Shown here one piece after another: positions 280-40,780 of a stretch of DNA of 40,780 bases. This stretch comes from Octopus bimaculoides (lineage: Eukaryota), in the NCBI RefSeq assembly GCF_001194135.2, contig NC_069000.1:41051175-41091954 (forward strand). Reading direction: 5' to 3'. A program made the translations under genes and the position numbers. The notes under the pieces are model-generated. The model was given only the letters and a program-made list of their open reading frames with translations. It had not been told where the DNA came from and made no database searches. The first letter of the stretch is position 1; every line of letters begins with the position of its first letter.

Positions 280-456
280 CTGTAATGCTTCTTTCTGTGT
301 CAAACATATCAAACATGAGGAGTTGTCCATAAATTGAAAAAAGGTGTGTTGCATCCGATGTTGTGCCGTTATGACAGGGGAACAACTGCAAACTTACATT
401 TCTGGGTAAAGGGAGACGATCTTGACCCAAGAAACTCTGGTAATTGGGAGCTCCAG
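280..456 (-). CDS. Peroxidase-like gene A, coding exon 4 (distal-site exon)
   Basis: Acceptor ttcgctttag, donor gtaagt, 177 nt, phase 1/1. Translation GAPNYQSFLGQDRLPLPRNVSLQLFPCHNGTTSDATHLFSIYGQLLMFDMFDTERSIT. LPLPRNVS matches LP-x-R-x-VS, and YGQLLMFDM aligns with MPO WGQLLDHDL. Confidence 0.92.
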
Positions 457-1821: not shown

Positions 1822-1961
1822 CATATGGTAAATGTGTTAAATATCGAGCATAGGGTGACGCTGCACTGCCTGCACGTCTCGGATCATCTTTATTACACTG
1901 GCCGTTTAATTCATAGTAGTTTGTATTGAGACATGGTAATGTGATGGGATTAGGACAGTGA
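1822..1961 (-). CDS. Peroxidase-like gene A, coding exon 3
   Basis: Acceptor ttctctatttttcaacag, donor gtatgt, 140 nt, phase 2/1. HCPNPITLPCLNTNYYELNGQCNKDDPRRAGSAASPYARYLTHLPY matches the family N-terminal C..C..YR.xDG.CN..P..G...F.R.L...Y pattern. Confidence 0.9.
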
Positions 1962-3199: not shown

Positions 3200-3815
3200 T
3201 CTGCCTTAGAAATATTATCCACATGACAAACAGAATATAATGAATTCCACTGAGAATAACCTGATGATTTGTAGAAAACTGTTGTGGAAGGATTCTGACC
3301 ATCCTCAACTGACTAAAGGGTAGATTCACTTATTGTTATAAAACGAAGAACTGTGAGTGATTGGCAGAAAGATGCAAATAAAACTGAAGAAAAAGATTGT
3401 TCTCAGATTCAAGCATGACGATCGGTAACGAATAAGAAAATAGACAAAAAATATCAAGACCGAATCCGTGTTATGGCTGCGGGGGTCTACATTATAAAAA
3501 TCACGGTCCGTTTAAAAATATAAACTGCTACAAGTGTGGTAAAACAGGCCACAAAAATTCGCAATGTAGGATAGAACCTAAGAAACAGTTTAACAGAAAG
3601 AATCGCGTAAAAAGATTATCGGTGACAAATAATACGAACGATCCTGAAGGAAAATTTCTGTATGTAAAAATCAATAACACAAAAGATAAGTTATCATTGG
3701 ATACAGGCATCGACTTTTAATAATGTCACAGATACATAGAAACAAATCGACAGACCTAAATTAAATGAAACCTCGAAGAATTGGCCCAAGAGTTTCAGGA
3801 AAATATTATATTTTA
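3200..3815 (+). mobile_element. Degenerate Ty3/gypsy gag-protease fragment
   Basis: Two zinc-knuckle-like motifs, CYGCGGLHYKNH and CYKCGKTGHKNSQC, then the retropepsin-like LSLDTG and KQIDRPKL with stops and frameshifts. Confidence 0.75.
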
Positions 3816-4715
3816 AGAGGAAGGAAGTATGGCACAGTGGAGGTTCGTTTCGCGACGGAAGATGAAGTGATAAAGTACTCCACTGAAGCCATAAAAACGG
3901 AAGAATGGGTACCTTTGCCGACGTACTGTGGCAAGCGTGTTGCCAGTGTGAGAATTGGCAAAGTACCCCCAGAAATAAAGGAAACATGGCTGATGGCAGC
4001 CATTATGCTTAACATGGAAGAAGAAGCTAAAATACTCAAAGTGACGAGGTTGAATTGAAGGGGGTTGGGCATAGAGATGGCTATACAAACAAGTTTGGAA
4101 GATCTGAACAGGATTGCAGAAGAAATAGTTCTGCCCGAGGATATAAGACTGAGAGTGGTGGTGGAGGATAGGCCTCCCATGTACCCCCATGTGGAGAGAA
4201 GGGCTATATGAAGGCAAGGTGCCCCTAGAGAGAAAAAGAACAACAAATGGAACAAACTGAGGAGCGGGAGAGTGTGGACCAAGTGGTGCGCGATGATGTA
4301 AAGAAGACGACAAGAACAGAGGAGGAATTCACAGTAGTCAAAAAGCGAAAGAGAAGTGAAAGAGTGAGCTCTCCGCCAGAGAGGCAGAAAGAGAAAAAAG
4401 AAGTGGTTAAAGAGGTAGAGAAAGAGGTTGAGAAAGAAGTCGAAAAGGAGGAAGGTGAGAAGATTGTTGACAAGGAGATCGAGAAGGAGCTTGAAGAGGA
4501 GCTCGAGGAGGAGTTTGAAAAGGAGGAGGAAGCTGCAAGATTTAGGCGAACAACAGCATGAGAATGGGGCCCATGCAGCCATTTCATTTTCATTATATAA
4601 TATATTTTTCATTTTCATTCGTTTTGTGTTTTTGTCCCCACTGTGGTGTTCTGTCTGTCCTTGTGCTGTCCTCTCTGTGTTTTAGCTGTAGTGCCAAAAT
4701 AAAGAATTATTATCA
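3816..4715 (+). mobile_element. Internally deleted L1/Tx1-like LINE: ORF1 fragment, E/K-rich low-complexity stretch and 3' end
   Basis: RKYGTVEVRFATEDEVIKYSTEAIKTEEWVPLPTYCGKRVASVRIGKVPPEI is homologous to the ORF1 at 26901. Ends in aataaagaattattatc, like the 3' end at 29330. Confidence 0.65.
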
Positions 4716-23370: not shown

Positions 23371-23725
23371 CTAGAATAACATAAAGAATATCTCCCACAT
23401 TCTGTCGACCAGTTTGTAGTCATTACCCATGGTATAATAGGCTATGGATTGCGTGTCATTACCCATCGTCTGTGCGAGTATCTTACTCCGCATTATCATA
23501 ACCGGGTCCAAAATATTAAGTGAATTCGGAGATGGACATGGTATTATTTCAAATGGACTTCCTAGGCAAGGGCAAGCAAGTGGTCTGGTTGACTGACAAA
23601 GACGGTACTTTAATTGTAATCTAACACAAGGGACTGCAACAGTTACAAAAGCGGACCAATTCCTTGAAACACCACAGTATTTGCAAAAATCTATATCTGG
23701 TAAAGAAGAGCACTGGACCGTCGAC
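23371..23725 (-). CDS. Peroxidase-like gene B, terminal coding exon (end of peroxidase domain + TSP1-like module + tail, TAG stop)
   Basis: Acceptor tctttatctttcaag is phase-2 compatible with the exon at 29383. STVQCSSLPDIDF matches the family C..LP.iDl motif, then WSAFVTVAVPCVRLQLKYRLCQSTRPLACPCLGSPFEIIPC; stop at 23371-23373. Confidence 0.88.
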
Positions 23726-24180: not shown

Positions 24181-26490
24181 TATGGAATATAAAAGAATTG
24201 TTCGTTTCAGGCAATGCAGGTAAATACAAAAGCCACATATATAGAAAATATCAGTAGTATAAATAAGGCAAAAAATATTGCAGAACATAATATAAACCAA
24301 ATTACAGGAAATTGTCAATCAGATATAACAACCTAAAGCCGTATACAACATAAAGCAGCTGAAAAGTCGTTGTTCATCACATAAATCATACGACAAACTG
24401 TAAAACACGAACCAAACTAATTAACAGCATCAATATCCCAAATACCGGCTACAACATACCGTTTATATGTAATCACATTCCAATAGCAAACTCACATATC
24501 AAACACTTCAAAAAATATTCACTGAAACCTGTACAAAACATAAGATTTTTAAACTGTTCCACACTATTCTATCAGATACTAGAAAATACTTTTTTTCAAT
24601 AGGTGTGGTGGGTGACAATTGNNNNNNNNNNNNNNNNNNNNNNNNNNNNNNNNNNNNNNNNNNNNNNNNNNNNNNNNNNNNNNNNNNNNNNNNNNNNNNN
24701 NNNNNNNNNNNNNNNNNNNNNNNNNNNNNNNNNNNNNNNNNNNNNNNNNNNNNNNNNNNNNNNNNNNNNNNNNNNNNNNNNNNNNNNNNNNNNNNNNNNN
24801 NNNNNNNNNNNNNNNNNNNNNNNNNNNNNNNNNNNNNNNNNNNNNNNNNNNNNNNNNNNNNNNNNNNNNNNNNNNNNNNNNNNNNNNNNNNNNNNNNNNN
24901 NNNNNNNNNNNNNNNNNNNNNNNNNNNNNNNNNNNNNNNNNNNNNNNNNNNNNNNNNNNNNNNNNNNNNNNNNNNNNNNNNNNNNNNNNNNNNNNNNNNN
25001 NNNNNNNNNNNNNNNNNNNNNNNNNNNNNNNNNNNNNNNNNNNNNNNNNNNNNNNNNNNNNNNNNNNNNNNNNNNNNNNNNNNNNNNNNNNNNNNNNNNN
25101 NNNNNNNNNNNNNNNNNNNNNNNNNNNNNNNNNNNNNNNNNNNNNNNNNNNNNNNNNNNNNNNNNNNNNNNNNNNNNNNNNNNNNNNNNNNNNNNNNNNN
25201 NNNNCCAATGAAGGAATCTATATGTGATTATTCGATTTGCTAGAACATTCGAAGAAGTCTTCTTTAAATTACACTCTGGTGTCTTTTAAAAGATGGTGCA
25301 TTGGACGGCATACTACAGTGCATTTTATTGCTGAAATTAAGGCGAGGTGATCATGGTTGGAATAACTTTAGGTTAACGTGCTATCCCACAAGAAGAAGGG
25401 ACCAGCATTACATGATCAAACTACAACAGTGTCGCCCAAGTCACAAACATTTTAATGTTGAAATGCCCTTTGTCATTTTCAACTAGATGTAAGCACCATT
25501 CATGTGGAACACCGGAACTACGAATCGAAGTTTGCTTTTCAGTTACAATTTTTCTACAACTGCTCAATGAAGGGCTGTACTGCAACAAAAATCGACATTT
25601 TCATTTGTACAAATGAGAATTAATATATGAAATATACAATATACACGAGAACATGAATATATGTATTTACACATAAATACACATATTTCACTCTCAATCA
25701 ATCAATGCATTCTTACATATGCCGATAACCAACGTTCTGTTGAACCCATTGTACTGTAGTGGTTGAATAACACATAGTCGTCTATTTAAAAGAATTCATA
25801 CATAAATTTAGACACAACAGTCATATTAAAATATCACAGAGTATAAATGTGAGTGGGCGAGTGAAAGAAGAAGATTAAACTAATTATCATTATTATTGTT
25901 GTCGCCGTAGGTGGACTTGTGTTCTGGATCTCCGTACGTTTGTGAGAATTTCACTTGTTTAAAAGGTTTTATACTTTATGTTTGGTTATTTAAATTATTT
26001 TACAAGCCAGCTGCTCTTCTGGAGAGCTGACTTTTGGGGGTGAGGTGCTATACAGCCCTTTTTTCTGTCTCTGTTTCAAAATTCTTCAAAATTCTTCAAA
26101 ATTCCTGGACGTGTTGTTTTGAGCTCGTAAGATGATATTGATTTTCGTTGCTTTCTAAAGTTTCGTTACCTGTTTTGTTGAAATGTTGTCGTTCTAAAAC
26201 ATTGTGTGTGCCCTGGAAGGGTTTGATGTAAAAGTTTGCACTTTCGAGTGCGAATTTTGGACATTCTTTCATCATTCANNNNNNNNNNNNNNNNNNNNNN
26301 NNNNNNNNNNNNNNNNNNNNNNNNNNNNNNNNNNNNNNNNNNNNNNNNNNNNNNNNNNNNNNNNNNNNNNNNNNNNNNNNNNNNNNNNNNNNNNNNNNNN
26401 NNNNNNNNNNNNNNNNNNNNNNNNNNNNNNNNNNNNNNNNNNNNNNNNNNNNNNNNNNNNNNNNNNNNNNNNNNNNNNNNNNNNNNNNNN

Positions 26491-29360
26491 CCGCTAGCAA
26501 CACACTCAACACAGAGATAAACTCTACTAAAAGCTCTTCCAACACCACCACCTCTAGTAACACCAACGACAGAAACAGAGAAAAGTTCAACAACTCAAGT
26601 GAGAATAAATCTGCAAACACTGAGACAGCCACCACAAACACGAACAACAATAGCAACAAGCCAAGCGTTTGCGAGATCGCCTCTATGGCGAAGCAAATTA
26701 AAGAAAGGTTCAATTACATAATCGAAGATATTAAAGGCTTGAAGGAGCTATTGGCAAGAAGTGGAAACAATATCTCTCTAAATACCCGAAATGAACTAAT
26801 AAGGGATACGAATAAGAAAACCCTCATTTACAAATGTGTGACTATAAATAAAAGACTATAACAAGCAATACGGTAGCGACTTGAGCTCATTTTAAAACCG
26901 ATGTGGAATGCAAAGACATATATAAAAAGAGGAAAACGTTTCGGCACTGCGTGGATGCGTTTTGCAACAGATCAAGAAGCAAGACACCATTCCACAGTGC
27001 CACTAAGATCTCAGGATTTTTCGCTCGTACTGACGTGCCTTGGTCGGTGCGTAACGAAAGTAAAAATTGGGGAGGTGCACCCAGAGATAAATATACGCTG
27101 GGTGGTTGATAGCGGCAGTCCTACTGGACATAGACAACACCGCCAAAATACTCAAAATACTGAAGGTGCACAAGTTGCACCAACAAAACCGGTCGGGTCA
27201 GTGGATGGAGGTCTTAATTCAAGTAGAACAAGGGAACATAGAATTCAACCCCGTTTTGTTCAGCCTACTGGACGGCACAAAACTCTACGAGGCCGTAAAG
27301 CACATAAGGCCGACGTGGTGACAAAAACCACCTCAAGGACTCTTGTCCCAGACAGGGAAGGGAGGAACGGCTGGCACTTTTACTCACACCAGCTTTGGTG
27401 CAATCTCCAGCGCAGCAGCATCAGCAGGTACTCTAGCTGCAGATGTCAGTGGCCAACACAGCAAAGATACCATCAATATGACCATCTTCACCACCACTAC
27501 CAACAACAACTCAGCAAAGGTACCATCAACATCACCATCATTATCACCACTACCAACAACCACAATACTGCCCTCAGCCACCGTCGAAACACCACCAACA
27601 GCAACTACAGCAACAGCACAAAAAAACCGACCTCAATATCAGTCAGAGTACCGTCACCAGCAGTAGTAGCAGCACCAGCAGATGCAGTCCTACCAAGTGT
27701 AACACTAAGCAGTGGCCCTCAAGTTATCCCCTTCCCGACCAGGGCAACTCAGACCTTCCAAGCACTGAGGTCGAGAAGGATGAATGGCTTACAGTCCCAA
27801 GTAAAAAGTGAAGAAAGAAAACGGCAAAACCACTAGAAGAAAAAGGTGGGGGGGCACAAAGTAGCTGAATATCCCAACAGCAGCAACACCCAAACACAAC
27901 CGCCAGCAACAACAAAAAAACCTCATTCACCTGCACAACAGCCTCATCCACAAACACAGGCAAGAACACAAATCCAAACACCAGGAGATTCCACAAACAT
28001 AACCAACCTGACAGCCATAAACACAAATAACATCGAACTCATGAACCATTTAAGAGATCACACAGACACCACAATAAAAATTTTGTTTTCCCGACACACA
28101 ACACACCACCATCACATATACAATTGTTTAAAATATCACAACAGACATACAAAATTTTTATATCAAATTACCCCGGAGCTGTTGGGCAGTTTCAGAAAAA
28201 AACATTACCAAAGGGCTTTTCAAAAATCTACTTGTGAAAACACGCATCCAAGAACAGTCTAAGGAACGGCGACTACACTTGCTCTCCGTCAAGCAAACGC
28301 TGGAGGTGCCACGGCCTGAGCGCATGCTTCTTCCACAGCTCGTCTGTTTGACTTATCTGCAATAACATTCGGGCCTGGGTCTAAGGATAATTTCCAGAAA
28401 TCCCTGGCCTGGCAGTAAATCTGGGGTGCACTATCTGTTCGAGATAAACTTTACAAGCACGGAAGTGCCGTCAGCTGAACCTACCCTAGCTGCGCGCAGA
28501 GCGAAGAAACCGTTCTCTACGCACTCGTTCAGTGCCTGAGCATTGCTGACCTGTAGGTTTNNNNNNNNNNNNNNNNNNNNNNNNNNNNNNNNNNNNNNNN
28601 NNNNNNNNNNNNNNNNNNNNNNNNNNNNNNNNNNNNNNNNNNNNNNNNNNNNNNNNNNNNNNNNNNNNNNNNNNNNNNNNNNNNNNNNNNNNNNNNNNNN
28701 NNNNNNNNNNNNNNNNNNNNNNNNNNNNNNNNNNNNNNNNNNNNNNNNNNNNNNNNNNNNNNNNNNNNNNNNNNNNNNNNNNNNNNNNNNNNNNNNNNNN
28801 NNNNNNNNNNNNNNNNNNNNNNNNNNNNNNNNNNNNNNNNNNNNNNNNNNNNNNNNNNNNNNNNNNNNNNNNNNNNNNNNNNNNNNNNNNNNNNNNNNNN
28901 NNNNNNNNNNNNNNNNNNNNNNNNNNNNNNNNNNNNNNNNNNNNNNNNNNNNNNNNNNNNNNNNNNNNNNNNNNNNNNNNNNNNNNNNNNNNNNNNNNNN
29001 NNNNNNNNNNNNNNNNNNNNNNNNNNNNNNNNNNNNNNNNNNNNNNNNNNNNNNNNNNNNNNNNNNNNNNNNNNNNNNNNNNNNNNNNNGAAAGGTGGGT
29101 GAATGTTGGAAAAATGGTTAGTGTGAAAGGACCTATCTTGAGCATGCACCTGTGAAAAATAAAAAAGAATGGGTTTGTGTTTTTTCCACGAGCAATCTTT
29201 AAATCACCTCCCCTTTTTCGGAGTTTCAATTGTTTATCTTCATTATTTCTCTGTTGACACGATTTAAAAACCCTTTTTATTGTCATGTTATGTCCTTTTA
29301 CGATATTTTATGTAAGCCCTTGTGGCTGATAAAAGAATAAATTATCATTATTATTATTTA
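26491..29360 (+). mobile_element. L1/Tx1-like LINE with internal deletion, antisense in gene B intron
   Basis: ORF1-like RGKRFGTAWMRFATDQEA..KVKIGEVHPEI with S/T/N-rich linkers. zf-RVT-like ORF2 C-terminus ALSVRDKLYKHG..CAQSEETVLYALVQC at ~28430-28545. 3' end ataaaagaataa + (TTA)n at 29330-29360. No endonuclease or RT core is seen; gaps flank and interrupt the element. Confidence 0.7.
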
Positions 29361-29382: not shown

Positions 29383-29482
29383 GAGTTATGTACAAAAGCA
29401 TTTTCTTTTACTTCAGTTAAACCCTCTACGTTACGACACAATAGTTGAGCCATAGTCACATTTCTGATCTCTGCAAGTTGCT
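29383..29482 (-). CDS. Peroxidase-like gene B exon (EQLAEIRNVTMAQLLCRNVEGLTEVKENAFVHNS)
   Basis: Acceptor ttttcgtatttcag, donor gtgagt, 100 nt, phase 1/2; matches the family QL.EIR..tla.iiCdN motif. Confidence 0.9.
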
Positions 29483-32463: not shown

Positions 32464-32624
32464 CATCTGTGAATACACCGGCGTTCTCAAAATAAAGTCT
32501 GTCATTTCTTTGCAATAAATTAAAAGTATCTTCGAATAATCTTTTTAATGTTGGTCCAACCATCGCGCCAGGAACTACGTTCTCCGATAAAGCCCCAGTT
32601 AAGAATTCAATGTCGAAGATGCTT
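32464..32624 (-). CDS. Peroxidase-like gene B exon (SIFDIEFLTGALSENVVPGAMVGPTLKRLFEDTFNLLQRNDRLYFENAGVFTD)
   Basis: Acceptor tattacag, donor gtaagt, 161 nt, phase 2/1; matches the DIDL..GGL.E...G..VGPT..C....QF..L..GDRF.FEN motif. Confidence 0.92.
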
Positions 32625-33662: not shown

Positions 33663-34000
33663 NNNNNNNNNNAGAATGAGTTTAAGTCCTATATGGTTAT
33701 TAATACGCTGTATGATAAATGAAATAGGGCTTAATTTCCGCCTACGTTAGTCACCCACTCTTGCATATTACTGTCTATGAAGCGGGAAAGTGAAGTATAA
33801 TATAATAACCACCGCCATTTTATACCTTACCGTGCATTTGTTGGTATATGTATTAATCAAGAATTGTTGTCGTACATATATAACTGATACTAAATCGTCG
33901 CCCGACCGCCGTTGCAAGATGAAACTGTATTATACACGTAAATTTTTTTTCAGTTGGTCTAAATACTAGTTTAAATTAATGGTACCTAATTATAGTAAGG

Positions 34001-34250
34001 GTGATGTGTGAGTGTTTATGAGCGAAACACCTAAGCTCTACGCGGCTCTAGCAGAAGGTAATGGAGAACTTCTGCTGACTCTTTCGCCACAACTTTCTCT
34101 CACTCTTTCCTCCTGCAACTAGCAGCTCACCTGTGACGGACCGGTGTCCCGTCCAAGTGGGGAACTTATACGCCAACGAAACCGGAATACCAGCCCTCAT
34201 GAATCAGGCATGGCCCGAAATGGATAAAGCAACAACAAGAATTATATTAC
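34001..34250. mobile_element. ~250-bp SINE-like insertion present only in the left arm
   Basis: The right arm reads ...tatagtag|ggttggctga continuously; the left arm has 250 extra bases between these flanks. Confidence 0.75.
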
Positions 34251-34597
34251 GGTTGGCTGAATTAATTATAGTTGTGTGTATTTGGTTGGAGCATGTTTTC
34301 GTACAGGTGACATATTCAGTTTAATGAATACTCAGGTCAAATCTATTAGCATCCGATTTCAGGAAAATAATAATTATTGCTCATGTTCTAATGATCTAAA
34401 ATTCCTAACTGCAAAATCTTGTTAATTCTATTCGTAGACTTACATAATTGCTGCTGAACCACACAGGCCAGATGCAAACAGATTACTTTTCACATAAATA
34501 TAAGAAAACATTGCAACTGTCAAGTTGGATGCGGCTCAACAATATTTTGAATAGTATACAACCAATTAAAAAGTAAAATACTTTAATATCCACTCAC

Positions 34598-34798
34598 TGA
34601 TGAGTATTTGATAAGGCAATTTTCATTGAAGTATTGTGGTGAGGCAAATCGGGAATACTTGTAGGCAAATTAGCAATCGGAACTGTGAGTGCCAGCCAAA
34701 CGAAGTACGGTGGTAGTCCTAAATAACGCGTGTCTTGGGTTAAGATTGACACTATATCGGAATATTGACAATTGTTTCGATAAGCACAGGGTATTTCT
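34598..34798 (-). CDS. Peroxidase-like gene B exon (EIPCAYRNNCQYSDIVSILTQDTRYLGLPPYFVW...)
   Basis: Acceptor tttttttcag, donor gtgagt, 201 nt, phase 2/2, open frame. DIVSILTQDTRYLGLPPY aligns with DLAALNMQRSRDHGLPGY of MPO. Confidence 0.92.
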
Positions 34799-35219
34799 CT
34801 GAAAAAAAAAAGAGAATTAGATATCAGAAAAAGGAAGTAATAAACTTAAAGGTGCATAATAATTTCTATAATTAGTAATACACCAGACATTCTAGGGAGG
34901 GATATAACGATTAAATTGATCCCAGTATTTTATTGTTTCTTATTTCATCTTCCGAAATATGACAAATAAAATCTACTTTGAAAGAACGTAAAAGGCAAAC
35001 TTTTTGTCCAATGATCAAACCATATTTTCATCCAGTAATTTCATGACGATTGTATAATTCACACACGCACAAACACATGTACATATGCGTGTTTGCCTAT
35101 ATAGATACATACATCCAAAATGGTATTTATTTTACAGACACCAGTGCTATCAAAGAATTGTCTGCTCTGATGGAATTTGAATTCAGTAAGTAGAGTTATC
35201 GAACGGAATATAGACTTAC

Positions 35220-35640
35220 CTTCCGATTTTTAAACTGCAGTTTGTCAGCATTCCATTAACAATGTTTGTCATCTCGGTATTTGAGGTTAATGGTACATCG
35301 TGCACAAGAACATTCGAACCTACAGTATCTCTCAACATCGAAGCCCCAACTAATTTATAGGCAGCGGCGAAAGAATTAGAAACCATAGGCAAATTTGTGC
35401 TATTGTAAGTATGAGTACTTGTATTCAAACATTTAACTGAGGTGTTCGTACCGAGCAGCAGTGGTAAATATTCGTTGCATATAATATGCTGGAACATTGC
35501 AATTAACAACGTCCTTGCTTCATTTCGGCAATCTGTATTGTTGCAAGTTTGATTAAGTCTACCGACAAGTCTATTGTGTTCACGAAGGAAAACATGATAT
35601 AATGCCATCACTAAGGGGTTTTCCCTGATTGGCGCTGAAA
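35220..35640 (-). CDS. Peroxidase-like gene B central exon (SAPIRENPLVMALYHVFLREHNR...FAAAYKLVGASM...)
   Basis: Acceptor tattttgcag, donor gtaagt, 421 nt, phase 1/2; family hallmarks FLREHNR, EAR, Q.I..EYLP.LLG and SNxF. Confidence 0.93.
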
Positions 35641-36555
35641 CTGCAAAATATAGAAAACATGTTTTGGTTTTATTAAACGAAGAAATTTCTTAGTGGAAGG
35701 AGATATATCTGTAAAGGCAACTGGCTCAAATTTAGCATATTAATGGTTTTAAATCTGGCTTAAATATAGCAATTTCGTTGAATCGATCCTAATGCTCAAC
35801 TGTTAGTTATCTTGTCAATACCGAAAGGCGAAGTCGACTTCGGTGGCATTTGAACTCAAAGCGTAAAGAGGGGAAAATGCCCTAAGCATTTTATCTATGC
35901 AGTAATGATTCAGCCAAGTCACTGCCTTGGTCACTTTTAGCATATTAATAACTATTATTCATTAAGTAACAATCGACTGAAATGCTTGTTAACATTCAAC
36001 AAGATATAATTTCAGTTCTGCTAATGTTTGAATGAAATCAAAATTCAGAGGAGAGTATTCTATTGCCTTGGCCATCTTAACTGGTACTTCTCTTAAAACA
36101 CGAACATGATCTATGAAATTCAAATATTTTCTCTAAATCTTAACTATTTTCAGGAAAAATTATTATGATGATACACTTGGTATGTATATTTGTTGTATGA
36201 CTGAAGGAGATGAGTACAACCAAAAATACAAAATATTCTACATATAACTGCCTACATCTTCAGGGATAACTTCTACCAAATAACTATTCAGGGCATCAAT
36301 GATTTCCTTCATTAAATTACTACATTGGAATAAATTAATGATATGGGTTGGATTTCAAGACTTTTACACAATTATTATCGATTCAAGCGCAAAAAAAATT
36401 ACTTTAAATCAGAGATGATTCCGACATTAAATTTGTCTTTTTTCATCTCATATAAAAGACGTACAGTATAAATTAACAAAGTTCTGACAAACGATGCTCC
36501 CTGACAATAATTAATACAATGAAAGCTTATCCCAGAACGTAAAATTGAAAGCATA

Positions 36556-36679
36556 ACGAGTTATAACATTATATAGCTAAAGTATAGCGTTCATAGCCTC
36601 TCTCCCTTAACAGTTCCCTGTAAACTAGCGTTCTTGTTTCTAACGGTCATTTACTTAGCTATATAATGTTATAACTCGT
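36556..36679. repeat. Small fold-back element with perfect 25-bp inverted repeats
   Basis: acgagttataacattatatagctaa (36556-36580) is the exact reverse complement of 36655-36679; 74-bp spacer. Confidence 0.9.
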
Positions 36680-36691
36680 ACGCAACCTTAC

Positions 36692-36749
36692 CATTAAGCG
36701 CATGTCTTGCTTTTGTAAGTTGGTTCCCTGACGATGAATTTATGTGCAT
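36692..36749 (-). CDS. Candidate upstream exon of gene B (MHINSSSGNQLTKARHALN)
   Basis: Donor G|gtaagg is phase 1, as the 35640 exon requires, and the frame is open back to an ATG. No good acceptor and no clear family motif; speculative. Confidence 0.3.
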
Positions 36750-36845
36750 TTCCAGCACCTCTTACTTCTTTGGAGTAGAGTGCACATATATTTTGAAACA
36801 TATGTTGGAATTAAAGGAACTTATTGATCATATGCGTTTTGCTCC

Positions 36846-36884
<39 letters not shown>

Positions 36885-37710
36885 TATCTANNNNNNNNNN
36901 TATACATGAGATATGTACCGTTGAAGTTTTGTAGTACACTTATTCCAAGAACACATACATTTTATGTATCTTCCATGAAAAGATGAAAAGTGCTTGTATT
37001 TGCACTTTCAAAGGGGCTTTGTCCCGTTTTATAAACCCCATTAGGTGGGGTTAAATAGTATTGTAAGATGGTGAAATTTTGGAAGTCGTCTTTATCTAGT
37101 ACCTAGTAGTTATGTTGCCATATTCATTGAAATCGGAGGTATTTGAAATTTCACTGGGGGTGTTTTTCCCACACTGACCAAAAATACAATGCAATTTCAA
37201 CCATTCAGAAAAGACCCATTTCTCTTTTTCTTTCTTTCTTTATTTATATATTCATTTCTTCCTTTCTTTCTCTCTTTTATTCTTTTTTTCTCTCTCTCAC
37301 CAAGACTCAAAAAATTGGCCACACGCACATACTTACAAATACATACATACACACATAAGCGCAAGCTTACACACAAACACAGACATAGACACACAGAGAT
37401 TAAAAATCCCAATACAGTTCGATCTTTTTCCAGCTAACTCAGGTACATATAAAAGGTATGAATTTTCTTCAAATAAATCATTCATGATGAATCTCTCAAA
37501 AGGAGATGAATGTTGAAGATAAATACTTATCCAAAATCCTCCGTTTTCTTTATGTGTATGTGCGTGCGTTTCCCTAATGTATATATATATATTATATGTG
37601 TGTGTGTGTGNNNNNNNNNNNNNNNNNNNNNNNNNNNNNNNNNNNNNNNNNNNNNNNNNNNNNNNNNNNNNNNNNNNNNNNNNNNNNNNNNNNNNNNNNN
37701 NNNNNNNNNN

Positions 37711-37754
<44 letters not shown>

Positions 37755-38996
37755 CACCAGAATAAAAGTAAAGACAAAACCAAATGTTGATATTTCGATA
37801 TTTTGAATGCATGTAATAGAGGCGGATGGGTTAGGCATGTAAGGTGGAAGTGAAAAAACATAGACAGATAAGGGGAAGCTGGATGAGGGAAAATCAAGTA
37901 CATAAATAGATAAATACATGATTAAACCGGCAATAAATCTGATTGGCAAAGAGTAGGAGACGAATGAGTAGAGGAAAACGGTTTTTTTTATCACGTGGGG
38001 TTACATAACGACTTCCTCATTGCACGCATGTGGCAGTTAAGCAGTTTTTTTTTATTCAATGGTGTTCAGTATGTTTTCGGTTTTTACTTTTGGGATAAGC
38101 TTTCATTGTATCAATTATAGTTAGAGAGTATCATTTGTGAGATCTTTGTTAATTTATACTGTACGTCTTTTATATGAGAGAGATGGAAAAAGACAACTTT
38201 AATGTCGGAATCATCTCTGATTTAAAGTAATTTTTTTCTGCGCTTAAATCGATAATAATTGTGTAAAAGTCTTGAAATCCAACCCATATCATTAATCTAT
38301 TCCAATGTAGTAATTTAATGAAGGAAATCATTGATGCCCTGAAAAGTTATTTGGTAGAAGTTATCCATGAAGACGTAGGTAGTTATATATAGAATATTTT
38401 GTATTTTTGGTTGTACTCATCTCCTTCAGTCATACAACTAACATACATACCAAGTGTATCATCATAATAATTTCTCCTGAAAATAGTTAAGATTTAGAGA
38501 AAATATTTGAATTTCATAGATCATGTTCGTGTTTTAAGAGAAGTACCAGTTAAGATGGCCAAGGCAATAGAATGCCTTCCTTTGAATATTGATTTCGTTC
38601 AAACATTACAGAACTTAAATTATACCTTGTTGAATGTTAAGATGCATTTCAGTCGATTGTGACTCAATGAATAATAGTTACTAATATGCTAAATGTGATC
38701 AAAGCGGTGACCTGGCAGAATCATTACTGTATGGACAAAATGATTAGTGCATTTTTCCGTCTTTGATTTCCGTCTTTGATTTCAAATGCCACCGAGGTCA
38801 CGTCGCCTTTCAGGATTGATAAGACAACTACCTGTTGAGCACTGGGGGTCAAATCCACGCAATTGCTGTCCTTGAACCAAAATTTGAAACCCTTATTACG
38901 CTAAATTTGAGCCAGTTGCCTTTACAGATATATCTCCTTCCACTGAGGAATTTTTTGTTTAATAAAACCAAAACATACGTTTTCTATATTTTGCAG

Positions 38997-39438
38997 TTGC
39001 GGAACCAATCATGAAAAACCCCTTAGTGATGGCATTATATCATGTTTTTCTCCGTGAACACAATAGACTTGTCGAGACACTTACCCCAGCTTGCGGCAGC
39101 ACAGGTTGCCGAAATGAAGCAAGGACGTTGTTGATTGCCATGTTCCAGCATATTGTATGTAACGAATATTTACCACTGTTGCTCGGCTCCTCAGCTAGAT
39201 GTTTGAATACAAGTAATTATACTTACGATAACACAAGTTCGCCTATGGTTTCTAATGCTTTCGCCGTTGCCTACAAATTAGTTGGGGCTTCGATGTTGAG
39301 AGATACTGTAACTATCGGTGGAAATTTAAATGTTTCTGTGAAAACTATACTGAACGACTCAACGCAAGTAGACTCAGATCTCGAGATGACGAACATTGTT
39401 AATGGAATGCTGACAGACTACAGTCTTAAAATCGGAAG
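38997..39438 (+). CDS. Peroxidase-like gene C central exon (AEPIMKNPLVMALYHVFLREHNR...FAVAYKLVGASM...)
   Basis: Acceptor tattttgcag, donor gtaagt, 442 nt, phase 1/2, open frame. Paralog of 35220-35640 with a net +7 codons. Confidence 0.93.
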
Positions 39439-39865
39439 GTAAGTCTATATTCCGTTCGATAACTCTACTTACTGAATTCAAATTCCATCAGAGCAGACAA
39501 TTCTTTGATAGCACTGGTGTCTGTAAAATAAATACCATTTTGGATGTATGTATCTATATAGGCAAACACGCATATGTATATGCGTTTGTGCGTGTGTGAA
39601 TTATACAATCGTCATGAAATTACTGGATGAAAATATGGTTTGATCATTGGACAAAAAGTTTGCCTTTTACGTTCTTTCAAAGTAGATTTTATTTGTCATA
39701 TTTCGGAAGATGAAATATGAAAATAAACTATTGAGATCCAATTAATCGTTATATCCCTCCCAGTATGTGTGGTGTATTACCAATTATACAAATTATTATG
39801 CAATTATAATTCCTATAAGTTTATTGCTTCCTTTTTCTGATATCTAATTCTCTTTTTTTTTTCAG

Positions 39866-40066
39866 AGAAATACCCTGTTCTTTTCGAGACGACTGCCAAT
39901 ACTCCGATATAGTGTCAGTCTTAATCCAAGACACGCGTTATTTTGGAATACCACCGTACTTCGTTTGGCTGGCGCTCACAGTTAATTCAACTGATATGCC
40001 TTCAACGATTGATAATTTGCCCTACCAGACACCTGCGAATCTAATAGCCACAGATTCATCTTATCA
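39866..40066 (+). CDS. Peroxidase-like gene C exon (EIPCSFRDDCQYSDIVSVLIQDTRYFGIPPYFVW...)
   Basis: Acceptor ttttttttcag, donor gtgagt, 201 nt, phase 2/2, open frame; paralog of 34598-34798. Confidence 0.92.
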
Positions 40067-40738
40067 GTGAGTGAATATTAAAATATTATACTTTTTAATT
40101 GGTTGTATACTATTCAAAATATTAGTGAGCCTCTTGCAACTTCATAGTTGTATTACTTTCATATGTGAAAAAAATTTGTTTGCATTTGGTCTGTGTGATT
40201 CAGTAGCAATTAGGTAAGTCTACGAATAGAATTAACAAGATTTTGCAGTTAGGAATTTTAGATCATTAGAACATGAGCAATAATTATTTTCCTGAAATCG
40301 GAAGCTAATAGATTTGACCTGCGTATTCATTAATCTGAATATGTCACCTGTACGAAAACATGTCGCAAGCAAATACACACAACTATAATTAAGTCAGCCA
40401 ACCCTACTATAATTAGGTACCATCAATTTCAACTAGAATTCAAACCAATTACGTTGTTTTCCATGAGAAAAAAAAATTTACGTGTATAATACAGTTTCAT
40501 CTTGCAACGGCGGTCGGGCGACGATTTAGTATCAGTTATATATGTACGACAACAATTCTTGATTAATACATATACCAACAAATGCACTGTAAAGTATAAA
40601 ATGGCGGTGGTTATTATATTATACTTCACTTTCCTGCTTCATAGAGAGTAATATGCAAGAGTGGGTGACTAACGTAGGCGGAAATTAAGCCCTATTTCAT
40701 TTATCATACAGCGTATTAATAACCATATAGGACTTAAA

Positions 40739-40780
<42 letters not shown>

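What the first reader, a model, noticed from the sequence alone, without database searches (positions are those of the whole stretch)
34598..40066. Genes B and C share loss of the proximal haem ligand network
FAAAYKLVGASM (B) and FAVAYKLVGASM (C) align with the family F..AafRfGHs motif, giving Arg333 to Leu and proximal His336 to Ala. DIVS(I/V)L(T/I)QDTRY(L/F)G aligns with DLAALNMQRSRDHG, giving Asn421 to Leu with Arg424 and His428 lost. Identical substitutions in both copies imply the loss predates the duplication and has since been conserved rather than decayed.
Basis: partly seen in the sequence, partly recalled or inferred. Interest (0 to 1): 0.7.

Follow-up and report, generated by a model that had tools for sequence, protein, structure and literature searches.

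The report
Haem-less peroxidase-like gene pair in octopus
Two neighbouring, oppositely oriented Octopus bimaculoides genes belong to an octopus-only family of peroxidase-shaped proteins that lost the residues holding the haem long ago and have probably been kept for some non-enzymatic job; this is an interesting but not unprecedented kind of "dead enzyme".

Summary
The window is Octopus bimaculoides chromosome CM046620.1. Gene B (minus strand, XP_014782530.1) and gene C (plus strand) both carry AYKLVGAS where the family has AAFRFGHS, so proximal His336 is Ala. Both carry QDTRY(L/F)G where the family has QRGRDHG, so Asn421 is Leu, Arg424 is Asp and His428 is lost. Distal Arg239 is also lost, replaced by Pro.

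Both assembly gaps lie in the non-coding spacer between the two genes. No exon crosses them.

The loss is much older than the B/C duplication. It is shared by an octopod-only clade found in O. vulgaris, O. sinensis and Argonauta hians. Full-length members of that clade have also lost the distal His, yet they keep the Ca2+ site, a signal peptide and a predicted lactoperoxidase fold.

B and C are intact over five exons, with no stop codons and only in-frame indels. dN/dS is 0.30 at family-conserved positions. Overall, though, dN/dS is about 1, and the exons have diverged about twice as much as the introns.

Both gene models lack the six 5' exons. The two genes sit head to head across a 100-N gap, so their completeness is unresolved.

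Best reading: non-catalytic, fast-evolving secreted pseudo-peroxidases.

The parts
35220..35640 (-). Gene B exon e1 (equivalent to exon 7 of the full-length O. sinensis paralogue). It encodes ..SAPIRENPLVMALYHVFLREHNRL.. and the proximal-helix motif FAAAYKLVGASM (35336-35371). The annotated start Met is at 35608.
   Evidence: AG acceptor and GT donor; Pfam profile positions 212-367; exact spliced match to XP_014782530.1
34598..34798 (-). Gene B exon e2, with DIVSILTQDTRYLG (34717-34758) in place of DLxxxNxQRGRDHG. Its 3' third is hypervariable between B and C.
32464..32624 (-). Gene B exon e3 (IFDIEFLTGALSE...DRLYFENAGVFTD)
   Evidence: Pfam profile positions 442-509; in-frame canonical splice
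29383..29482 (-). Gene B exon e4 (EQLAEIRNVTMAQLLCRNVEGLTEVKENAFVHNS)
23371..23725 (-). Gene B exon e5, the last exon including the stop codon. It encodes a Cys-rich beta region and three C-terminal helices with no Pfam match. B/C dN/dS here is 1.88.
38997..39438 (+). Gene C exon e1, with FAVAYKLVGASM (39260-39295). The annotated start Met is at 39011. The Glu242 equivalent is Lys (MKNP).
39866..40066 (+). Gene C exon e2, with DIVSVLIQDTRYFG (39906-39947). Exons e3-e5 of C lie beyond the window, after a 2583-N gap.
33673..36555 (.). Arm of the inverted duplication carrying B e1-e2. Homology with C continues leftwards, past the 10-N gap, to about 22900.
38070..40780 (.). Opposite arm carrying C e1-e2. 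It continues beyond the end of the window.
36556..38069 (.). Unique spacer between the two arms. It holds both assembly gaps (36891-36900 and 37611-37710), no family exon, and a MITE-like element at 36556-36679.

Best explanation
B and C are two young paralogues arranged head to head. They belong to an octopod-specific, tandemly clustered family derived from animal haem peroxidases.

The family keeps the lactoperoxidase/myeloperoxidase fold, the Ca2+-binding loop, a signal peptide and a C-terminal Cys-rich domain. In the subclade that contains B and C it has lost nearly every residue that ligates, positions or covalently links the haem: Asp94, distal His95, Arg239, Arg333, proximal His336, Asn421, Arg424 and (in most members) Gln91.

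Inferred mechanism: the proteins no longer bind haem or turn over peroxide. They act as secreted, glycosylated, non-catalytic binding or matrix proteins. Their helical core is held by purifying selection while surface patches and the C-terminal domain diversify quickly.

Shown here: the substitutions, how widely they are shared across the clade, the intact ORFs, the heterogeneity of selection, and fold retention in predicted models. Inferred only: absence of haem, secretion of B and C themselves, and the binding role.
For: Source and identity: O. bimaculoides CM046620.1; B = XP_014782530.1; C = the 414-aa model.

Residue table across 15 octopod proteins and canonical controls:
- distal FG[KRT]LL[KM][FA]DMF where the family has GQFxxHD;
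- V[SG]D.I[NSK].NP where the family has GDxRxNE;
- AY[KE]L..[AD]S where the family has AAFRFGHS;
- QD[TS]R where the family has QRGRDH;
- the Ca2+ loop T.xID.S and Asp96 are kept.

Phylogeny: octopod clade 100 %; His-less subclade 97 %, including an Argonauta sequence; B+C 100 %.

Fold: the AlphaFold model of full-length paralogue P0176 has pTM 0.79 and TM-scores of 0.70-0.76 to lactoperoxidase. The B model has mean pLDDT 81 and matches the MPO heavy chain.

Selection: no stops (P about 3e-4), 5 of 5 coding indels in frame, and dN/dS of 0.30 at family-conserved columns against 1.2-1.4 at variable ones. dN at variable columns is 0.325, against 0.093 non-coding divergence.

Glycosylation: 11 and 9 N-glycosylation sequons in B and C.

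Genomic context: at least 5 family members within about 140 kb.
Against: Neither B nor C has the six 5' exons (signal peptide, distal-site helix, Ca2+ loop). These are absent both between the two genes and within about 10 kb beyond their 3' ends. Secretion and a complete fold for B and C are therefore assumed, not shown.

Overall B/C dN/dS is 1.04, which alone is compatible with neutrality.

The intact ORFs, and the low dN/dS at conserved sites, could partly be imported by gene conversion from functional paralogues.

No expression data were available, and no tool here can model the haem or its cavity. A sister subclade (P0005/P0153) keeps both histidines, Arg239 and Glu242, so haem binding may persist in part of the family.
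Confidence: 0.6

Rival explanations
1. B and C are 5'-truncated, non-functional gene pieces. A fold-back (inverted) segmental duplication with a breakpoint in intron 6 copied only the 3' five exons. Their open frames persist because the copies are young or are repeatedly patched by gene conversion from functional neighbours.
For: Homology between the arms stops about 915 bp upstream of e1 in both copies. No exon 1-6 equivalents lie in the spacer or in the flanks. Both public gene models start at an internal Met. Overall dN/dS is 1.04. Identity along the arms is mosaic, with 96-100 % blocks next to 74-85 % blocks, which suggests gene conversion.
Against: About 7.7 stop codons are expected under neutrality and none is seen. 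All 5 coding indels are in frame, against 20 % of non-coding indels. dN/dS is 0.30 at positions conserved in the other paralogues. All splice sites are intact in both copies. The spacer contains a 100-N gap of unknown true size, and the whole region is a patchwork of short contigs.
Confidence: 0.22
2. The proteins still bind haem, or another tetrapyrrole or metal, through a substitute axial ligand such as the nearby Tyr or Lys of AYKL. They would then retain some redox or ligand-carrier function.
For: The fold and the helices lining the pocket are retained in the models. Tyr in AY[KE]L is almost invariant in the clade. The sister subclade keeps both His residues.
Against: The position one helical turn before the lost His alternates between Lys and Glu among paralogues. 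The conserved Tyr is five residues away, so it should face off-axis (inference from helix geometry). The propionate-binding Arg333 and Arg424, the H-bond partner Asn421, the distal His and Arg, and the ester-link Asp94 are all gone together. Glu242 differs between B (Glu) and C (Lys).
Confidence: 0.08
3. Assembly artefact: B and C are two haplotypes, or a mis-joined or mis-oriented copy of one locus, rather than two genes.
For: Both motif-bearing contigs are short (about 3 kb) and bounded by gaps. The join between them crosses a 100-N gap flanked by mutually reverse-complementary microsatellites.
Against: The copies differ at 8.7 % of aligned non-coding sites, with 79 indels, and at 31 % of amino acids. 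That is far above allelic variation. Orientation is consistent over at least two contigs on each side: B e3-e5 run leftwards on the minus strand, and C e3-e5 run rightwards on the plus strand. A mis-orientation would change the layout but not the finding.
Confidence: 0.05

Closest known systems
Animal haem peroxidases (Pfam PF03098; chordate peroxidases MPO/LPO/EPO and invertebrate 'chorion peroxidase'/peroxinectin-type enzymes of the peroxidase-cyclooxygenase superfamily)
   Same: Clear homology (E down to 1e-87 for family members). The fold is predicted to be the same, with TM-scores of 0.70-0.76 to lactoperoxidase. Paralogues keep the Ca2+ loop and the REHN and GDRF(Y/F)YE motifs, and they are secreted.
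   Different: The haem-ligating and catalytic residues defined for the family (Gln91, Asp94, His95, Arg239, His336, Asn421; PMC3533774) are replaced. There is an extra C-terminal Cys-rich/helical domain with no Pfam match.
Peroxidasin-like protein PXDNL (human)
   Same: A peroxidase-domain homologue in which conserved active-site residues are replaced. It has no measurable peroxidase activity, and a non-enzymatic role is presumed (PMC8533639).
   Different: PXDNL changes only a few distal residues (Gln->Trp, Asp->Glu) and keeps the multidomain LRR/Ig architecture. The octopod clade has lost both the distal and the proximal networks and is a single-domain protein with a short C-terminal extension.
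Peroxidase-homology domain of dual oxidases (DUOX1/2)
   Same: A peroxidase fold used as a non-classical extracellular domain. It appears among the structural matches (7d3e, 6wxr). From my own knowledge, the human domain lacks key haem-site residues and classical activity.
   Different: The DUOX domain is fused to a membrane NADPH oxidase. The octopod proteins are free-standing. Structural similarity is weaker (TMq 0.5-0.6, rmsd about 8 A).
Cephalopod tandem peroxidase clusters (Euprymna scolopes light-organ halide peroxidases; Belcaid et al. 2019, PMC6386654)
   Same: Lineage-specific tandem expansion of haem-peroxidase genes in cephalopods. That paper notes independent clusters in squid and octopus, with high gene turnover or gene conversion suggested.
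   Different: The squid light-organ enzymes are active halide peroxidases. The papers I could search make no mention of haem-ligand loss in the octopus cluster.

Membership tests
Animal haem peroxidase domain (PF03098) | Significant match to the family profile | tested here: met
   B scores 153 bits (E 1e-44) and C 172 bits (E 2e-50), against a cut-off of 25 bits. Only profile positions about 220-530 of 530 are covered.
Animal haem peroxidase domain (PF03098) | Mainly helical LPO/MPO fold | tested here: met
   Paralogue P0176 model: pTM 0.79, TM 0.70-0.76 to LPO. B model: mean pLDDT 81, about 340 columns aligned to the MPO heavy chain. These are predictions, not solved structures.
Catalytically competent animal haem peroxidase | Proximal His336 as axial haem ligand | tested here: not met
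   Ala in both B and C under both MAFFT and HMMER alignments.
Catalytically competent animal haem peroxidase | Asn421 H-bonded to the proximal His; Arg333 and Arg424 at the haem propionates | tested here: not met
   Asn421->Leu and Arg424->Asp. Arg333->Leu by MAFFT, or Lys by HMMER with a one-residue gap.
Catalytically competent animal haem peroxidase | Distal Arg239 | tested here: not met
   Pro in B (SAPIRENP) and in C (AEPIMKNP).
Catalytically competent animal haem peroxidase | Distal Gln91-x-x-Asp94-His95 | tested here: inconclusive
   The exons that would encode it are missing from B and C. In paralogues of the same subclade His95 is Phe or Ala, Asp94 is Lys or Met, and Gln91 is Lys, Arg or Thr. 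Neighbouring gene A has GQLLMFDMF.
Catalytically competent animal haem peroxidase | Glu242 ester link to haem | tested here: inconclusive
   Glu is kept in B but is Lys in C. Among paralogues the position varies between Glu, Lys and Gln.
Catalytically competent animal haem peroxidase | Haem binding and H2O2-dependent oxidation | not testable with these tools
   This needs expressed protein with spectroscopy and activity assays.
Inactive peroxidase homologues (PXDNL / DUOX-domain type pseudo-enzymes) | Retained fold with replaced active-site residues, maintained by selection | tested here: met
   Lack of activity itself was not tested.
Peroxinectins (cell-adhesive peroxidases) | [quoted passage not shown] | tested here: inconclusive
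   At the xGDRF site B has RND. C has RGD, in its exon e3, which lies outside the window. Paralogues vary (KGD, TGD, NSD, NAD). The motif is not conserved in the family, and adhesion was not tested.

The most novel reading that the evidence does not exclude
The octopod clade may be a family of haem-free, peroxidase-fold recognition proteins under diversifying selection. Exons have diverged about twice as much as introns at both silent and replacement sites. Variable patches are rich in glycosylation sequons, and the C-terminal domain has dN/dS of about 1.9. This would be comparable to the accelerated evolution seen in reproductive, immune or venom proteins. B and C would be its newest members, possibly acting at the egg coat, in fertilisation, or in host-microbe or prey interaction.
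Probability: 0.25. Interest if true: 0.6.

Novelty: new member of a known kind. Interest (0 to 1): 0.4.

Why it matters
Dead-enzyme relatives of animal haem peroxidases are known (PXDNL, the DUOX domain), but few have been examined. This case is a whole lineage-specific, tandemly expanding family that stripped out the complete haem-binding network while keeping the fold.

It also has an internal contrast. One subclade still carries both histidines, which gives a natural series for asking what a peroxidase scaffold does without haem.

There is a practical point as well. Public annotations call these proteins 'heme peroxidase 2', 'peroxidase mlt-7' or 'chorion peroxidase-like'. Transcriptome studies that read them as oxidative enzymes would be misled.

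Tried and rejected
- A word-indexed protein search with exon e1 alone found nothing. The full HMMER scan was needed.
- Repeating the profile search at a looser E-value added only two distant hits.
- The search for 5' exons was negative: six-frame ORFs in the spacer, and tblastn with full-length paralogues on the window, L001 and L003.
- The FGHS at 26256 (plus strand) is a chance match and not part of a peroxidase exon.
- The spacer sequences are unique, and homology does not resume beyond the MITE-like element.
- I first thought exons were far more diverged than introns because the adjacent introns are 98-100 % identical. Over all 7.3 kb of aligned non-coding DNA the contrast is about two-fold and also affects silent sites. 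Simple positive selection on amino acids is therefore not the whole story.
- Variable residues are not enriched in loops over helices.
- The C-terminal domain has no Pfam match.
- The O. vulgaris locus for P0002 is not on record.
- Literature searches by accession or name found nothing.
- The qPCR primers for the O. maya oviducal-gland 'chorion peroxidase' do not match the window.
Full report
WHAT THE WINDOW IS

The window is AT-rich eukaryotic DNA with 14 runs of N, microsatellites and introns. An exhaustive HMMER scan with the spliced product of gene B returned a 100 % identical protein, XP_014782530.1 / A0A0L8GBG9 of Octopus bimaculoides. Public databases name it 'heme peroxidase 2' or 'peroxidase mlt-7-like'. 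The encoding locus is GCA_001194135.2, chromosome CM046620.1, and it is base-for-base identical to the window.

THE OBSERVATION

All four peptide strings are present at the stated places: B on the minus strand and C on the plus strand. The exons that carry them match Pfam An_peroxidase.

In a MAFFT alignment with canonical family members, AAFRFGHS becomes AYKLVGAS in both copies. This gives Arg333->Leu and His336->Ala. DLASMNIQRGRDxG becomes DIVS(I/V)L(T/I)QDTRY(L/F)G. This gives Asn421->Leu, Arg424->Asp and His428->Leu/Phe.

A pairwise HMMER alignment to eosinophil peroxidase inserts one residue, which pairs Lys with Arg333, but it still puts Ala under the proximal His. The His loss is therefore robust, while the Arg333 assignment depends on the alignment.

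Distal Arg239 is Pro in both copies. The Glu242 equivalent is Glu in B but Lys in C.

THE GAPS

The gaps at 36891-36900 and 37611-37710 lie in the 1.5-kb unique spacer (36556-38069) between the two genes. That spacer contains no family exon. Each e1-intron-e2 unit sits in one uninterrupted contig. No reading frame crosses a gap.

The 100-N gap is flanked by (TA)n(TG)n on the left and (CA)n(TA)n on the right. The window itself ends at a 2583-N gap.

GENE STRUCTURE

B has five exons on the minus strand: 35640-35220, 34798-34598, 32624-32464, 29482-29383 and 23725-23371. All have AG/GT boundaries, and the spliced translation is exactly the database protein.

C has exons e1 (38997-39438) and e2 (39866-40066) in the window. 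Exons e3-e5 lie beyond it, and the spliced product matches the 414-aa public model.

The two genes are the arms of an inverted duplication. The B arm runs from 36555 leftwards to about 22900. The C arm runs from 38070 rightwards to about 54200 in window-equivalent coordinates. Orientation is consistent across at least two contigs on each side.

The arms differ at 8.7 % of 7312 aligned non-coding sites and by 79 indels. They are therefore paralogues, not haplotypes.

WHAT IS MISSING

The full-length O. sinensis paralogue P0176 has 11 exons. Exons 1-6 encode the signal peptide, the distal-site helix and the Ca2+ loop, and they lie 4-18 kb upstream of the exon equivalent to e1.

No such exons exist between B and C, whose e1 exons are 3.4 kb apart. 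None exists within about 10 kb beyond either 3' end. Both public models start at an internal Met.

Either the 5' exons are unassembled, given the 100-N gap of unknown size and the highly fragmented region, or both copies are truncated. I could not resolve this.

THE FAMILY

The nearest relatives are all octopod: O. vulgaris, O. sinensis, Argonauta hians and another O. bimaculoides gene. On the same chromosome there are at least five members within about 140 kb:
- a P0178-like gene;
- P0177;
- a gene whose 5' exons are at window 1961-1822 and 456-280 (minus strand);
- B;
- C.

Full-length members carry a signal peptide. The Ca2+ loop (T.xID.S) and Asp96 are kept. The distal motif GQFxxHD reads FG[KRT]LL[KM][FA]DMF, and GDxRxNE reads V[SG]D.I[NSK].NP.

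A neighbour-joining tree gives 100 % support for the octopod clade. It splits into two subclades:
- P0005/P0153 plus an Argonauta sequence (99 %). In P0005/P0153 both histidines, Arg239 and Glu242 are retained, but Asn421 and Arg424 are lost.
- The remainder (97 %), including another Argonauta protein. Here the proximal position is Ala (Asp in one lineage).

B and C pair with 100 % support. The proximal-His loss therefore predates the Octopus-Argonauta split and is far older than the B/C duplication.

An unnamed transcript-derived protein, P0023, is sister to the octopod clade at 70 %. It also lacks the proximal His but keeps the distal His and RDHG. The order of the losses is therefore not settled.

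FOLD

An AlphaFold2 model of P0176 has pTM 0.79 and mean pLDDT 76.5, with values of 85-94 over most of the C-terminal two-thirds. It superposes on lactoperoxidase and myeloperoxidase with TM-scores of 0.70-0.76.

The B product alone gives mean pLDDT 81 and matches the MPO heavy chain. Confidence collapses around residues 93-106 and 130-151. The second stretch includes the helix that would carry Asn421, which fits a need for the missing N-terminal half.

The proximal helix and the 'Asn421' helix are predicted as helices. No coordinates are returned, so I could not inspect the cavity.

SELECTION BETWEEN B AND C

Amino-acid identity is 69 %. dN is 0.203, dS is 0.194 and dN/dS is 1.04. By exon, dN/dS is 0.66, 1.01, 2.2, 0.47 and 1.88.

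Coding divergence is about twice the non-coding divergence (JC 0.093), at both silent and replacement sites. Differences are strongly clustered along the coding sequence.

Despite this, there is no stop codon, where neutral simulation expects about 7.7 (P = 2-5e-4). All 5 coding indels are multiples of three, against 16 of 79 in non-coding DNA.

I then classified codons by conservation among the other paralogues, which is independent of B and C. dN/dS is 0.30 at conserved columns (p = 0.007), 1.17 at intermediate columns and 1.38 at variable columns.

The core is therefore constrained, while the surface patches and the C-terminal domain evolve at or above the neutral rate. Patchy gene conversion is also evident, with 96-100 % intron blocks next to 74-85 % blocks. 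It may contribute to these patterns.

B and C carry 11 and 9 N-glycosylation sequons, against 0-2 in P0176 and P0177.

INTERPRETATION

The most likely reading (0.6) is a secreted, non-catalytic pseudo-peroxidase family. Haem ligation was lost before octopod diversification, and B and C are young, fast-diverging members.

The main rival (0.22) is that B and C are truncated relics of a fold-back duplication. Residual haem binding through another ligand (0.08) is disfavoured for three reasons. The whole network is gone together. The residue one helical turn before the lost His alternates between Lys and Glu among paralogues. Glu242 differs between B and C.

COMPARISON WITH WHAT IS KNOWN

The residues that define catalytic competence are listed in PMC3533774. 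Inactive homologues are documented for PXDNL (PMC8533639) and, from my own knowledge, for the DUOX peroxidase-homology domain.

Independent tandem peroxidase clusters in squid and octopus were noted by Belcaid et al. (PMC6386654), without comment on haem-site loss. I found no paper on this clade.

I file it as a new member of a known kind (dead peroxidase homologues), of moderate interest.

Noticed in passing
window 1822-1961 (-) and 280-456 (-): These are 5' exons (equivalent to exons 2 and 3) of a third family member that runs off the left end of the window. The distal motif reads GQLLMFDMF: Gln91 is kept, Asp94 is Met and His95 is Phe.
   Followed up: partly
window 36556-36679: A 124-bp MITE-like element with perfect 25-nt terminal inverted repeats sits exactly at the inner edge of the inverted duplication on the B side.
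   Followed up: partly
window 37580-37760: The 100-N gap is flanked by (TA)n(TG)n on the left and (CA)n(TA)n on the right. These are mutually reverse-complementary microsatellites, so this may be a scaffolding join or a local palindrome centre.
   Followed up: no
window 3436-4055 (+) and 26877-27833 (+): Gag-like ORFs, one with two CCHC zinc knuckles (3436-3717), and two related ORFs sharing an RFAT.(D/E)(E/Q) motif. These are retroelement remnants, and the second lies inside intron 4 of gene B.
   Followed up: no
window 35229-34929 vs 39430-39727; 36486-36092 vs 38139-38538; 33952-33673 vs 40465-40764: Intron and flank blocks are 96-100 % identical between the arms, directly next to exon and intron stretches that are only 74-91 % identical. 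This mosaic suggests recent gene-conversion tracts.
   Followed up: partly
P0005/P0153 (O. sinensis) and first half of P0175 (O. vulgaris), not in the window: A sister subclade keeps the distal His (FGLFLMHDMF), GDDRINE and a His at the proximal position (AYKLAVHSM), but has lost Asn421 and Arg424. It is a possible intermediate, or partly haem-competent form.
   Followed up: partly
L004 (CM046620.1 40.976-41.015 Mb): Two more family members (P0177 and a P0178-like gene) lie 46-75 kb to the left of the window, so the family forms a tandem cluster. The 875-aa and 1074-aa public models appear to be fusions of neighbouring genes.
   Followed up: partly
B and C products: B has 11 and C has 9 NxS/T sequons in about 400 residues, against 0-2 in paralogues P0176 and P0177. 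Many of them lie in the hypervariable patches.
   Followed up: no
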